From contig NC_083236.1 of assembly GCF_032191835.1 (NCBI RefSeq), positions 12,772,001 through 12,836,000 on the forward strand: a stretch of DNA of 64,000 nt, written 5' to 3'. Under the pieces are notes generated by a model that did no database searches, was not told the DNA's origin, and saw only the letters and a list, made by a program, of their open reading frames with translations. Each line of letters opens with the position of its first letter. The first letter of the stretch is position 1. A program made the position numbers and the translations under genes. Shown one piece after another: positions 18,186 to 54,571 of the stretch. Origin of the DNA: Heteronotia binoei (taxonomy: Eukaryota).

Positions 18186-19115
18186 ATACCAAACTGGCTC
18201 TGGTTATGAAGACATCAGCCAGCATGTGCAATGTTGCCTTAAATGCTCAAGCATAGGAACGGTGAGTTAAAAAAACAAAACAAAAAACCTCACCCCAACA
18301 ATTCCACTATTGCTCCTCTTGCCTCTAAAACGCACCTAAGTTTAGACAAAAGTACCACAGATCTAAGAGCTGAAGGATTACTCGCCTGAGAAGTACCAAG
18401 GCTCCTTGGGTTGTGCTGTTGCAAGTGTTAACGGTTACCTTTTCTTTCTGTACTGATCAGGATTTTAGTCATCAATTAGTTAGCTTAAATCCTGAGCAGA
18501 ACAGAACAAAATAACAAAAACAATCATCATCAATGGTGAGAAGCAAACAGAAGATGAATGTGAAACGATGGAACTTGCATCTCCTACGGTACTATCTGGC
18601 ATATCAGTGGAATTCAGAAGTATAAATGCTTTTCTACAAGCAAAACTGCAAATTGACTCAATGGTACCTCAGCACATGAATATTAGTTTTTGCCATCTGA
18701 AAACAAATTGGGTATTATTTGGGACAGAAACAGCCTCTCACTGGGACGGGTAGCATATCTGGATATCAACTTTACAACATTGAAAACACTCGACTCTTTA
18801 ATAACACAAAACCTATAATATGTTAATAACATATAACCCATCATATTATACTACGGTCACGTTTAAGCAATAAATATATGCTCAAAATATGTTCTACGTG
18901 CCTACAGCAGACGCAGAAATTGCTGTAGATTGTTTCACATGAATACCTTCACGCTACACATCCCGATGAAATCAACTTTTGCCTTAAGAAGAATTCCACT
19001 CCATTCCAAAAAAGTGAAACCTTTCACAGTATGCTCCCACCCACCCACCCCGCCCCAGCACTCTCCAAATTTCCAGTTTTCTAACAGGAAGCCTGCAAAG
19101 CCCTCCAAATTCTTC

Positions 19116-19530
19116 CATAAGAACGTAAGAACATAAGAGAAGCCATGTTGGATCAGGCCAACGGCCCATCAAGTCCAACACTCTGTGTCACACAGTGGCA
19201 AAAAATGTTATATACACACATACACTGTGGCTAATAGCCACTGATGGACCTGTGCTCCATATTTTTATCTAAACCCCTCTTGAAGGTGGCTATACTTGTG
19301 GCCGCCACCACCTCCTGTGGCAGTGAATTCCACATGTTAATCACCCTTTGGGTGAAGAAGTACTTCCTTTTATCCGTTTTAACCTGTCTGCTCAGCAATT
19401 TCATTGAATGCCCACGAGTTCTTGTATTGTGAGAAAGGGAGAAAAGTACTTCTTTCTCTACTTTCTCCATCCCATGCATTATCTTGTAAACCTCTATCAG
19501 GCCTCTATCTCTATCTCTATCAGGCCTCTC
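19116..19530 (-). mobile_element. CR1 LINE 3' fragment
   Basis: LIEVYKIMHGMEKVEKEVLFSLSHNTRTRGHSMKL...KYFFTQRVINMWNSLP...FKRGLDK; (CTTATGTT)n tail. Confidence 0.9.
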
Positions 19531-19946
19531 TACATCTCTGCGTGCAACTAGGTGCAACGCAGAGCTCCAAAAATGGCCAGGGTACCTCAATGCAACTCCC
19601 AACTCACATACAAGACTCCAAGTCCCTATAGGAATGCACATCTGCCAACTGGTGTACTTACAGCCCACTGTCCCCCACCCCCAAGCCTCCAAGCAGCATG
19701 CTGGGGGGGGAGGGGGGGTTCTCCCTGAAGTATTCCCGGGAGCTGCTCCTGCATCAGTCCCCTGCACACCTGGAGGAAGCCCCCCCCCCCCACTTCCCAG
19801 GGCCCTGCTAAGGCGGCTGGAGACACCTGCAGGTGCCTGGCCACCCCCCCCCCCCGAGGCTCCTTCCCGGCCGGGGCCCTGCAGGCTCCAGGGCAGCCCG
19901 GCTTCTGGGGAATGGCCCCCCGCCCCCTCCCCCCGGCGGGCCTTAC

Positions 19947-20120
19947 GCTGCTGTTGTGGCCGGTCCAGTGCACCATGGCTTGGTTGTGCGCCGCGTCGCC
20001 TTTGAGCACGAAGGAGGTGCTGAGCAAGGCGGGCAGCGCCGGAGCCCCCCGCGGGCCCACCTCGCCCCCCGCCAGGCAGCCCAGCAGCAGCAGCAGCAGC
20101 CCCGCAGCCGCCAGCGCCAT
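19947..20120 (-). CDS. SORCS2: SORCS2 (VPS10-domain receptor) coding exon 1, 58 codons, phase-0 donor; the rest of the gene lies left of the window
   Basis: Translates [58 protein letters not shown] followed by a GTAAGG donor at 19946. [23 protein letters not shown] is the recalled start of the SorCS2 VPS10 domain; a signal peptide and CpG island are present; synteny with GRPEL1/TADA2B fits SORCS2. Confidence 0.92.
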
Positions 20121-20220
20121 GCTCGGCCTGCCCTCCTCTGCCGCCGCCGGGCAGGGATGCGCGGCCGGGCGAGGCGGTTGGAGAGGCGGAGGCGGAGAGG
20201 GGGCCGGCGCGGCCTCCGCG

Positions 20221-20245
20221 GGGAAGGGAAGGGAAGGGAAGGGAA
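20221..20245. repeat. (GGGAA)5 / (TTCCC)5 microsatellite in the SORCS2 leader
   Basis: Read directly from the sequence. Confidence 0.95.
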
Positions 20246-20423
20246 GGGGGCTCGCTCCGGAGCACGGGGCCGCGGCGCCCTCTGCCGGCCCATCGCGCCA
20301 TCGCCGCGCGAGGTGAAGCCCCGCGGCTCGCCCCTTCTTCGCCCACTCCGAGCCCCGAGGCGCCCAAGCCTGCCGGTGCGTTGCTGCGCGGGAAAGACCC
20401 CGCGGGGGCGCTCGGCCAGCCCT

Positions 20424-22748
20424 TGAACATACGAAGCTGCCTGATACTGCATCAGACTCTGGGTCCATCCAGGTCAGTATTGGCTACTCAGACTGGCAGC
20501 GGCTCTCCAGGGTCTCAAGCGGAGGTTTTTCACACCTATTTGCCTAGACCCCTTTTTTGGAGATGCCGGGGATTGAACCTGGGACCTTCTGCTTCCCAAG
20601 CAGATGCTCTACCACTGAGCCACCGTCCCTCCCCTTGGACATATGAACATATGAAGCTGCCTTCTACTGAATCAGACCCTCGGTCCATCCAAGTCAGTAT
20701 TGTCTACTCAGACTGGCAGCGGCTCTCCAGGGTCTCAAGCGGAGGTTTTTCACACCTATTTGCTTAGACCCCTTTTGTATTGGAGATGCCAGGGATTGAA
20801 CCTGGGACCCTCTGCTTACCAAGCAGATGCTGTACCACTGAGCCACCGTCCCTCCCCTTGGACATATGAACATATGAAGCTGCCTTCTACTGAATCAGAC
20901 CCTCGGTCCATCCAAGTCAGTATTGTCTACTCAGACTGGCAGCGGCTCTCCAAGGTCTCCAGCGGAGGTTTTTCACACCTATTTGCCTAGACCCCTTTTG
21001 TGTTGGAGATGCCAGGGATTGAACCTGGGACCCTCTGCTTACCAAGCAGATGCTCTACCACTGAGCCACCGTCCCTCCCCTTGGACATATGAACATATGA
21101 AGCTGCCTTCTACTGAATCAGACCCTCGGTCCATCCAAGTCAGTATTGTCTACTCAGACTGGCAGCGGCTCTCCAGGGTCTCCAGCGGAGGTTTTTCACA
21201 CCTATTTGCCTGGACCCCTTTTGTGTTGGAGATGCCAGGGATTGAACCTGGGACCTTCTGCTTCCCAAGCAGATGCTCTACCACTAAGCCACAGCCCCTC
21301 CCTGTGTCTCTCCAGGGTCTCAAGCTGAGGTTTTTCACGCCTCTTTGCCTGGACCCCTTTTGTGTTGGAGATGCCAGGGATTGAACCTGGGACCTTCTGC
21401 TTCCCAAGCAGATGCTCTACCACTGAGCCACCGTCCCTCCCCTTGGACATATGAACATATGAAGCTGCCTTCTACTGAATCATACCCTGGGTCCATCCAA
21501 GTCAGTATTGTCTTCTCAGACTGGCAGCGGCTCTCCAGGGTCTCCAGCGGAGGTTTTTCACACCTATTTGCCTGGACCCTTTTTAGTTGGAGATGCCAGG
21601 GATTGAACCTGGGACCTTCTGCTTCCCAAGCAGATGCTCTACCACTGAGCCACAGTCCCTCCCCAAAGTAACATTTCTTTTTTTCTGTGTGTCACTAATC
21701 TGAGTATTCCTCCTGATTAGAGGGAAAGGAGGTCATGCCAAAGCACAACAATATGCAGAAATTCAGTAGACGGCACCTTCCACAGAGGATCTTTTCAGCA
21801 TGCAGATACTATTTTTCATATCATCCTATTGGGGAATTTTTACTAGGGAGAAGTCCAAAGGGAGAGAAGCATTTGAACATATGAAGCTGCCTTATACTGA
21901 ATCATACCCTGGGTCCATCAAAGTCAGTATTGTCTACTCAGACTGGCAGCGGCTCTCCAGGGTCTCCAGCGGAGGTTTTTCACACCTATTTGCCTTGACC
22001 CCTTTTGTGTTGGAGATGCCAGGGATTGAACCTGGGACCCTCTGCTTACCAAGCAGATGCTCTACCACTGAGCCACCGTCCCTCCCCTTAGACATATGAA
22101 CATATGAAGCTGCCTTCTACTGAATCAGACCCTCGGTCCATCCAAGTCAGTATTGTCTACTCAGACTGGCAGCGGCTCTCCAGGGTCTCAAGCTGAGGTT
22201 TTTCACCCCTACTTACCTGGACCCTTTTTTGGAGATGCCAGGGATTGAACCTGGGACCTTCTGCTTCCCAAGCAGATGCTCTACCACTGAGCCACCGTCC
22301 CTCCCCTTGGACATATGAACATATGAAGCTGCCTTCTACTGAATCATACCCTGGGTCCATCAAAGTCAGTATTGTCTACTCAGACTGGCAGCGGCTCTCC
22401 AGGGTCTCCAGCGGAGGTTTTTCACACCTATTTGCCTTGACCCCTTTTGTGTTGGAGATGCCAGGGATTGAACCTGGGACCCTCTGCTTACCAAGCAGAT
22501 GCTCTACCACTGAGCCACCGTCCCTCCCCTTAGACATATGAACATATGAAGCTGCCTTCTACTGAATCAGACCCTCGGTCCATCAAAGTCAGTATTGTCT
22601 ACTCAGACTGGCAGCGGCTCTCCAGGGTCTCAAGCGGAGGTTTTTCACACCTCTTTGCCTGGACCCTTTTTTGGAGATGCCGGGGATTGAACCTGGGACC
22701 TTCTGCTTCCCAAGCTGATGCTCTTCCACTGAGCCACCGTCCCTCCTC
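20424..22748 (-). repeat. Head-to-tail array of 10 tRNA-derived SINE copies (about 220 bp each; clusters 20424-21666 and 21873-22748; one partial copy)
   Basis: Units are joined by ccctcccctt(g/a)gacatatgaacatatgaagctg; same family as 12958-13180. Confidence 0.93.
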
Positions 22749-53130: not shown

Positions 53131-54224
53131 GTAAGTATAGAGTTGTTTTTGTTAGGTTGGCACCCTAATAATCATGACTTAAGGCTAAAGCTTGAAAATA
53201 TAACAACAATGCCATTCATCTAAAGCAAGGGTCCCCGAACATTTTGAGCCTGCAGGAATATCTGGAATTCTGACCATGGCATGGTGGGTGCAGCAACAAA
53301 GTGGTTGCCACAGCTTACCTTCAGTCACACAGTGCAGATCCTTGTGCTGTGGTGGCAGCGGCTGTCAGAGAAACATTTTTTTTTTTTCAAAATCTGCACT
53401 AGTCAATCGGAAGCCTTGCTGGGTAAAAGTCCTACCTAGTCCCACTCGCTTCCTAAAAACACTTGGTGGATGCCAGAGAAGGTTTCCGTGAGCACCTTGG
53501 CACCCACAGGCACCACATTGGGAACCCCCGATGTAAAACATGTACTGGTGGCACGGCTTTAAAGAAGCACAGATAATATTAACTAGCTTGGGTTTTCACT
53601 TCATGGCATAGGAGGCACCAGTAAGTTGCACCCAAACCTAAGGAACTTTGTCACCCTGGACATATAAACATATAAAAGAATTAAATTAAAACGTAGAAAA
53701 GAATTAAAAGTGCCGCCCATTTTTGAGCTTGAGACTAAGGATGAATCTTGGGACTGAAAAAAGTTGACGTTTGCAGCTAGTACTCCTGCTGTAACTTTGA
53801 TGCTGCAGTTCTGTAAATATTAGAGATGGGCATGAACTGGAAAAATGCAGTTCTTGTTGGTTCATGGCTGAACCGCAAGCAGAATTGAATGGGAGACTCA
53901 TTTGCAAACTAAACTAGTTCATGGCCCCGCAAACCCTATTAAAAGGGGCCACATTTCCTTTAAAACAGGCTTTCTAGTAAACATACGCAGGGTCCTGAAG
54001 CATAATCTGCATTAACTGCAATCTGTCGTGGCCTGTATCTTAATAGAGTTCTCTCAGTTGTACAGGATGTTGGTATCTCAGTACTTAGTAGCATATCATA
54101 GTTAATAGGTGTACTTCCTGGGCCTGAATACTGCAGACAAATCTGGAACAAACATTTTCTCTCAGGCAATTGGAGTATTATTACACTCAGGATCGACTGA
54201 AACGTGACTGATTTCTTGCTTTAG

Positions 54225-54571
54225 GGATTCAGAGTTTCTGTAAAGACTTGTTAGACGTTGCTGATGTTCTGGAGAAAGCAACAGAGAGTGTTCCCAAAGA
54301 GGAGCTCAAGGATGAAAACCCTCATCTGAAAAACCTCTACGAAGGTCTTGCTATGACTGAAGTTCAGATACAGAAAGTGTTTGGAAAACACGGCTTGGTG
54401 AAACTGAATCCCCTTGGGGCCAAGTTTGATCCTTATGAACACGAAGCATTATTCCACGTCCCCATGGAAGGGAAGGAGCCCGGCACAGTAGCTTTAGTGT
54501 CTAAGGTTGGCTATAAATTGCACGGCCGTACTCTGAGGCCCGCCTTAGTTGGCATAGTGAAAGAACCATAA
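54225..54571 (+). CDS. GRPEL1: GRPEL1 exon 4 to stop; full CDS 672 nt, 223 aa GrpE nucleotide-exchange factor
   Basis: ttcttgctttag acceptor; GIQSFCKDLLDVAD...FDPYEHEALF...GYKLHGRTLRPALVGIVKEP* carries GrpE C-terminal signatures. Confidence 0.97.

What the first reader, a model, noticed from the sequence alone, without database searches (positions are those of the whole stretch)
19947..20120. SORCS2 exon 1 appears to lack the propeptide and furin site
Seen: only about 13 residues ([13 protein letters not shown]) separate the hydrophobic signal peptide from the STSFVLKGD start of the VPS10 domain, with no RxxR motif. Established (from recall): mammalian VPS10-family receptors, including SorCS2, are made with a furin-cleaved propeptide, and human exon 1 encodes roughly 100 more residues. 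Inference: this lineage makes a propeptide-less SorCS2, which could alter folding, trafficking or proneurotrophin binding. The junction motif also reads WTGHNSS, which I recall as SorCS1/3-like, rather than WTGENSS.
Basis: partly seen in the sequence, partly recalled or inferred. Interest (0 to 1): 0.7.

Follow-up and report, generated by a model that had tools for sequence, protein, structure and literature searches.

The report
Gecko SORCS2 lacks a propeptide
This is the real, already annotated first coding exon of a gecko's SORCS2 receptor gene, where the short removable N-terminal segment and its furin cutting site found in most vertebrates have been deleted, probably with little consequence.

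Summary
On the minus strand, an ATG at 20120 opens 58 codons that end at a GTAAGG splice donor after 19947. They encode a poly-Leu signal peptide, a 14-residue linker with no RxxR motif, and the conserved start of the SorCS2 VPS10p domain, ending in WTGHNSS.

These 58 residues are identical to the first 58 of the RefSeq SorCS2 model of the gecko Heteronotia binoei (XP_060109767.1). The short form is therefore already annotated.

- **Other squamates:** skink, cordylid, teiid, lacertid, amphisbaenian, agamids and snakes keep a short propeptide ending in RQRR, RRRR or RHRR about 30 residues before STSF.
- **Geckos:** three other geckos (Eublepharis, Paroedura and an unnamed gecko-like sequence) also lack any RxxR. 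The loss is therefore old in geckos and not an assembly slip of this genome.
- **Elsewhere:** gene models of an anguid lizard, both monotremes and a shrew lack the site too.

This region is the least conserved part of the protein. Published work shows that SorCS propeptides do not block ligand binding, and that mouse SorCS2 made without its propeptide folds and binds proneurotrophins. The loss is therefore most likely neutral erosion.

Read-level confirmation failed because no available run covered the exon. The scan had not recorded this finding before.

The parts
19947..20120 (-). SORCS2 first coding exon, coding part: 58 codons from the ATG to the splice donor
   Evidence: Translation. Identical over 58 of 58 residues to the N-terminus of the Heteronotia binoei RefSeq SorCS2 model P0260; tblastn finds only this exon in the window. 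Mouse SorCS2 structure 6ffy is the only real PDB match, E 5e-10.
20064..20120 (-). Signal peptide, residues 1-19: poly-Leu core encoded partly by a (CTG)6 run, with a small-residue c-region ending A-G-G
   Evidence: Sequence inspection and the CAG/CTG repeat. The cleavage site was inferred from the -3/-1 rule; no predictor was run.
20022..20063 (-). 14-residue linker (residues 20-33) in place of the propeptide. It has one Arg, no RxxR and no dibasic site
   Evidence: The alignment shows it is what remains of the squamate segment after the AARP...RQRR...SSPREE part was deleted.
19947..20021 (-). Conserved start of the mature receptor and VPS10p domain (residues 34-58, STSF to WTGHNSS), including the N-S-S glycosylation sequon
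   Evidence: Majority-residue frequency is 0.94 across 41 orthologues here, against 0.51 upstream. Invariant columns begin at F37.
19941..19946 (-). Splice donor GTAAGG, phase 0. Exon 2 (VILILTK...) is not in the window
   Evidence: A motif scan found no exon 2 in the window.
20121..20420 (-). 5' leader and promoter-side part of a CpG island (19700-20400: GC 0.76, CpG o/e 0.66)

Best explanation
This is the genuine first coding exon of SORCS2 in a gecko, either Heteronotia binoei or a very close relative.

The ancestral squamate gene encoded a signal peptide, then a propeptide of about 10-12 residues ending in an RxRR furin site, then about 30 poorly conserved residues before the conserved STSF start of the mature receptor. 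On the gecko stem the RxRR site was lost. Further in-frame deletions in this GC-rich, low-complexity stretch then shortened the segment step by step, from Eublepharis to Paroedura to Heteronotia. In Heteronotia the signal peptide abuts a 14-residue linker.

The inferred mechanism is that signal peptidase alone produces the mature N-terminus, which lies within a few residues of where furin leaves it in mouse. There would then be no proform and no furin step at this end of the protein.

The SorCS propeptide neither blocks ligand binding nor is needed for folding. I therefore read the loss as neutral erosion of a dispensable, disordered segment, and not as a functional innovation.

What is shown: the sequence, its identity to the annotated model, the distribution across species, and the low conservation. 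What is inferred: the signal-peptidase site, the lack of any other processing, and the neutrality.
For: **Exon anatomy and start context:**

**Gene identity**
- The PDB search hits only SorCS2.
- The exon is 58 of 58 identical to XP_060109767.1.
- A GrpE-domain exon lies divergently at 54212-54568, E 2e-32. This fits the GRPEL1-SORCS2 neighbourhood.

**Distribution across species**
- Eight non-gecko squamate lineages, plus turtles and birds, keep RxRR.
- Heteronotia, Paroedura, Eublepharis and the unnamed Logan sequence P0002 have no RxxR.
- Of 166 SorCS2-type sequences, 154 have RxxR after the signal peptide and 12 lack it. Those 12 are geckos, Elgaria, monotremes and Sorex.

**Low conservation:** nothing is conserved before residue 32. 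The length before STSF ranges from 28 to 140 residues, leaving out two over-extended models of 164 and 232.

**Literature**
- Mature mouse SorCS2 is residues 117-1072. Made without the propeptide, it folds, dimerises and binds NGF, proNGF and proBDNF (PMC6065357).
Against: - No reads or cDNA of this species could be laid on the exon. The four runs tried covered only a repeat at 19075-19514. The extra 15-residue shortening specific to Heteronotia therefore rests on one assembly.
- All comparison sequences are computational gene models or ORF fragments, and GC-rich first exons are often mis-modelled. The Sceloporus models start inside the exon and the Eublepharis model is over-extended.
- No signal-peptide or convertase predictor was available, and no protein-level data exist for any gecko.
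- Neutrality is argued from mammalian experiments, not tested in geckos.
Confidence: 0.75

Rival explanations
1. Assembly artefact. GC-rich sequence encoding a pro-segment was collapsed or dropped from exon 1 in this genome assembly.
For: The exon lies in a CpG island with GC of 0.74-0.80, a (CTG)6 run and nearby homopolymer runs. It is the second-shortest linker among 166 sequences. No independent reads of this species could be obtained.
Against: The frame, signal peptide and donor are intact, and no N run is near. Paroedura, Eublepharis and the unnamed P0002, from separate data sets, also lack any RxxR. They form a graded series leading to the Heteronotia state. At most the last 15-residue step could be an artefact, not the loss of the furin site.
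Confidence: 0.06
2. Wrong start. An unannotated upstream exon, or a non-AUG or upstream start, adds an N-terminal extension with a pro-segment.
For: The in-frame reading upstream of the ATG stays open for about 115 codons. The Eublepharis model shows how such GC-rich leaders can be read as protein.
Against: There is no in-frame ATG in the CpG island. The poly-Leu core must sit near the N-terminus to act as a signal peptide. An extension upstream of it would lengthen the signal peptide's n-region, as in mammals, and would not create a propeptide downstream. The RefSeq model uses the same ATG.
Confidence: 0.04
3. A cryptic mini-propeptide is still removed by non-canonical processing, for example monobasic cleavage after the Arg of the G-x-R-G motif that all four geckos keep.
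For: An Arg followed by G-(A/S)-P is kept in Heteronotia, Paroedura, Eublepharis and P0002. It aligns with the GLR of other squamates.
Against: There is no basic residue at P2, P4 or P6, so it is not a furin-type site. In other squamates the conserved Arg lies downstream of the real RxRR site, where it is not a known cleavage point. There is no experimental hint.
Confidence: 0.07
4. Adaptive change. Loss of the propeptide alters folding, trafficking or proneurotrophin binding of SorCS2 in geckos.
For: Reviews describe propeptide cleavage as a general maturation step of the family (PMC9673319). The human SorCS1 propeptide has a binding activity of its own, towards sortilin.
Against: Propeptide-free mouse ectodomain folds and binds ligands. 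SorCS propeptides do not gate the VPS10p domain. The region is the least conserved in the protein. It was lost independently in at least four lineages, which is the pattern expected of a dispensable segment.
Confidence: 0.08

Closest known systems
Heteronotia binoei SorCS2, RefSeq XP_060109767.1 (P0260)
   Same: The first 58 residues are identical to the window's exon 1. It is the same gene and almost certainly the same genome.
   Different: Nothing differs. The model simply carries no comment on the missing propeptide.
Mammalian SorCS2 (mouse Q9EPR5; structure 6ffy)
   Same: The conserved start STSFVLKGD...WTG-x-NSS is shared, with E 5e-10 to the 6ffy chain. The exon structure is the same, with the signal peptide and the start of the VPS10p domain in one exon.
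   Different: Mouse has a pro-segment of about 65 residues ending in a furin site. Its mature protein starts at residue 117, about 20 residues before STSF. The gecko has 14 residues after the signal peptide, no furin motif, and His where mouse has Glu in WTG-E-NSS.
SorCS2 of other squamates (Podarcis, Tiliqua, Pogona, Pantherophis and others)
   Same: The signal peptide, the GAP...LLSTSF linker end, and everything from STSF onward are shared.
   Different: They keep AARP-x-DW-x-S-R-Q-R-R followed by SSPREE, that is, a propeptide of about 10-12 residues with a strong furin site.
Sortilin and SorLA propeptides
   Same: They belong to the same receptor family and have the same position in the precursor.
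   Different: In sortilin and SorLA the propeptide binds the receptor's own VPS10p domain, and furin cleavage is needed to open it for ligands. This is not so in the SorCS subgroup (PMC10540051). Loss of the propeptide would matter there but is tolerated here.

Membership tests
SorCS2 orthologue (VPS10p-domain receptor, SorCS subgroup) | Conserved N-terminal start of the VPS10p domain with the SorCS2 signature (F-V-L-K-G-D and W-T-G), as against SorCS1/3 (F-A-L-x-G-D and W-S-G) | tested here: met
   The exon is 58 of 58 identical to an annotated SorCS2.
SorCS2 orthologue (VPS10p-domain receptor, SorCS subgroup) | N-terminal signal peptide | tested here: met
   A poly-Leu core and a small-residue c-region were seen by inspection. 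No predictor was run.
SorCS2 orthologue (VPS10p-domain receptor, SorCS subgroup) | Furin-type RxxR site ending a propeptide between the signal peptide and the VPS10p domain. Reviews state this for all family members. | tested here: not met
   No RxxR or dibasic site lies in residues 20-33. The site is present in 154 of 166 comparable sequences.
SorCS2 orthologue (VPS10p-domain receptor, SorCS subgroup) | Full architecture: VPS10p propeller, 10CC, PKD and membrane-proximal domains, transmembrane helix and tail | not testable with these tools
   Only exon 1 is in the window. The 90% cluster holding the Heteronotia model carries Pfam PF15902, PF15901, PF00801 and PF18911.
SorCS2 orthologue (VPS10p-domain receptor, SorCS subgroup) | Conserved neighbourhood: divergent GRPEL1 next to SORCS2. 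The human arrangement is from my recall. | tested here: met
   A GrpE-domain exon lies on the plus strand at 54212-54568, E 2e-32.
Propeptide-gated VPS10p receptors (sortilin/SorLA type) | The propeptide occupies the ligand site until furin removes it | tested here: not met
   No propeptide is encoded. The literature says the SorCS subgroup lacks this gating anyway.

The most novel reading that the evidence does not exclude
SorCS2 has lost its propeptide and furin site independently in at least four amniote lineages: geckos, an anguid lizard, monotremes and a shrew. These natural propeptide-less receptors would show that the textbook statement, that all VPS10p-domain receptors are made as furin-cleaved proforms, is not universal. 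They would also show that the SorCS2 propeptide has no essential role.
Probability: 0.55. Interest if true: 0.35.

Novelty: new variant of a known kind. Interest (0 to 1): 0.22.

Why it matters
The finding gives a small correction to a general statement in the VPS10p-receptor literature, and a natural control for it. If geckos, monotremes and others make SorCS2 without any pro-segment, the SorCS2 propeptide is dispensable in vivo. That agrees with mammalian in vitro data.

It does not open a new mechanism. The sequence is already in public annotation, so the value is modest and comparative.

It also shows that the region before STSF is an indel-prone, GC-rich stretch, and that gene models there should be read with care.

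Tried and rejected
- **Pfam scan of the 58-residue exon:** no family matched, because the exon lies upstream of the Pfam domain boundaries.
- **First word search, with a tiger query:** it returned only mammals, birds, turtles, amphibians and fish. A second search with a duck query was needed to reach squamates.
- **Third word search, with the Paroedura N-terminus:** it added no new gecko clusters, because all geckos sit in one 90% cluster. Listing the members of that cluster gave them.
- **The look-up of encoding contigs:** The species behind the unnamed Logan sequences P0002 and P0003 could therefore not be traced.
- **Sequencing runs:** no run held more than 0.22 of the sampled words. The four runs laid covered only a dispersed repeat at 19075-19514 and gave zero depth on the exon. 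This is uninformative, not negative.
- **AlphaFold model of the Heteronotia protein from a 41-sequence alignment:** mean pLDDT was 54.9 and pTM 0.33, with residues 1-58 all below 50. This is too poor to say anything about disorder of the linker, so I did not use it.
- **Paper search:** no paper in the library holds both SorCS2 and gecko.
- **SorCS1 or SorCS3 as the gene's identity:** rejected on the FVLKGD and WTG signature, the exact match to SorCS2, and the neighbouring GrpE gene.
- **No spliced model was joined.** Only exon 1 is in the window, and it was searched by reference.
- **Human RefSeq protein entries** that the searches returned were not aligned or searched further. They entered only the bulk motif count.

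Full report
**What is in the sequence.** The feature lies on the minus strand. An ATG at 20120 (context A at -3, G at +4) opens a frame of 58 codons. The frame ends at 19947 and is followed at once by GTAAGG.
- Residues 1-19 are a typical signal peptide. Its poly-Leu core is partly encoded by a (CTG)6 run, and it ends in a small-residue A-G-G stretch.
- Residues 20-33 are the linker [14 protein letters not shown].
- Residues 34-58 run from STSFVLKGD to WTGHNSS.

The linker has one Arg, so it holds no RxxR and no dibasic site. Upstream, the same frame stays open but has no ATG until SINE-derived sequence about 350 bases away. The exon sits in a CpG island (GC 0.76, CpG o/e 0.66). No N run is near it.

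**Which gene and which genome.** Against all PDB chains, the only real match is mouse SorCS2 (6ffy), at E 5e-10 over residues 27-58. The exhaustive phmmer search returned 116 sequences. Nearly all are exon-1 fragments of SorCS1, 2 or 3, and the F-V-L-K-G-D and W-T-G signature places this exon with SorCS2. Listing the members of the gecko cluster gave the RefSeq model of Heteronotia binoei, XP_060109767.1. Its first 58 residues are identical to the window's exon, and tblastn finds only that exon in the window. A GrpE-domain exon on the opposite strand at 54212-54568 (E 2e-32) fits the GRPEL1-SORCS2 neighbourhood. So the window comes from this gecko or a very near relative, and the short exon 1 is already in public annotation.

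**How the short form arose.** I compared the N-termini of named orthologues.
- Skink, cordylid, teiid, lacertid, amphisbaenian, agamids and snakes share one layout. The signal peptide is followed by A-A-R-P, a few residues, then RQRR, RRRR or RHRR, then SSPREE...GAPEAAS, then LLSTSF.
- Turtles carry the homologous A-A-R-P...RARR, so this layout predates squamates. In squamates the propeptide is already only about 10-12 residues.
- Eublepharis keeps A-A-R-P-P-G-W-G-S but has lost the RxRR.
- Paroedura is shorter again.
- Heteronotia has also lost the A-A-R-P part.
- An unnamed Logan sequence (P0002) looks like a further gecko and also lacks RxxR.
- Euleptes has an RVGR at the very end of its hydrophobic core, which is ambiguous.

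The loss of the furin site therefore goes back to early geckos, and the stretch kept shrinking afterwards. The His in WTGHNSS is shared by Heteronotia, Paroedura, Euleptes and P0002. Eublepharis has Glu there.

**How unusual it is.** I counted 166 SorCS2-type sequences that start with Met and have a recognisable hydrophobic core. Of these, 154 have RxxR between that core and STSF, and 12 do not. The 12 are the four geckos, the anguid Elgaria, six isoforms from platypus and echidna, and the shrew Sorex. The distance from the hydrophobic core to STSF has a median of 82 residues. Heteronotia, at 14, is second shortest after Sorex. Anolis sagrei and a caecilian keep an RxxR but have only vestigial propeptides. 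In a 41-species alignment nothing is conserved before residue 32. The majority-residue frequency is 0.51 before STSF and 0.94 within residues 34-58. This is the least constrained part of the protein, and it is encoded in GC-rich, repeat-prone DNA.

**What it most likely means.** Reviews state that every VPS10p-domain receptor is made with a furin-cleaved propeptide (PMC9673319, PMC10540051). The same sources say that only in sortilin and SorLA does the propeptide bind the receptor's own ligand site. The SorCS subgroup is not gated in this way. The mouse SorCS2 crystal structure used residues 117-1072, that is, without signal peptide or propeptide. That protein folded, dimerised and bound NGF, proNGF and proBDNF with nanomolar affinities (PMC6065357). 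From the PDB alignment, furin leaves about 20 residues before STSF in mouse. Signal peptidase would leave 14-16 in the gecko. I therefore infer that the gecko receptor matures by signal-peptidase cleavage alone, giving nearly the same N-terminus, and that the loss is neutral erosion of a dispensable segment. The cleavage site and the neutrality are inferences; neither was measured.

**What could not be done.**
- No public run held the locus. The four runs I laid covered only a dispersed repeat at 19075-19514 and gave no depth on the exon.
- The gecko-wide loss does not depend on this assembly. The final 15-residue shortening in Heteronotia does.
- The structure prediction was too poor to use.
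- No signal-peptide or convertase predictor was available.
- All comparison sequences are gene models, and some are clearly imperfect at this exon (Sceloporus, Eublepharis).
- Human protein entries returned by the searches entered only a bulk count.

**Verdict.** The interpretation that geckos make a propeptide-less SorCS2 is supported at sequence level. The proposed functional consequences are unlikely. The short form is already annotated, and similar losses occur in other lineages. It is a minor new variant of a well-known receptor and of modest comparative interest.

Noticed in passing
window 19075-19514: A dispersed repeat in SORCS2 intron 1 is very abundant in both RNA and DNA runs of another organism, at 90-99% likeness. 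Many reads show 'goes back about 67' joints around 19126-19192, which suggests that copies elsewhere carry a tandem duplication of about 66 bases.
   Followed up: no
window 20291-20301 and 20221-20248: Two upstream ATGs (20301 and 20293, minus strand) lie in the two other frames. Both frames stay open through the main start codon to the end of the exon. A (GGGAA)5.6 repeat lies between them and the main ATG. If the transcript starts upstream of them, they would overlap and dampen the main ORF. The scan has already noted this as s1-333772.
   Followed up: no
window 20424-21000 and beyond: A head-to-tail SINE array with a 223-base period and 94% matches starts about 300 bases upstream of the SORCS2 ATG. 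The scan has already noted this as s1-333773.
   Followed up: no
window 54212-54568 (+): A large GrpE-domain exon (Pfam PF01025, E 2e-32) belongs to a GRPEL gene that is transcribed divergently from SORCS2.
   Followed up: partly
proteins P0243, P0226, P0269, P0231: The SorCS2 models of Elgaria multicarinata, echidna, platypus and Sorex araneus also lack any RxxR after the signal peptide. The monotremes also have WTGHNSS. These look like independent losses.
   Followed up: partly
proteins P0262, P0277, P0274: The Eublepharis model has about 170 residues of Arg/Gly/Pro-rich sequence upstream of the signal peptide, which is probably leader sequence read as protein. The Sceloporus models begin at the Met inside the HNQAMVHW motif, so they lack most of exon 1. 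This exon is often mis-modelled.
   Followed up: no
window 19703-19718, 19780-19791, 19844-19855: Long G and C homopolymer runs lie in intron 1, just downstream of the donor. They are error-prone for sequencing but lie outside the coding part.
   Followed up: no
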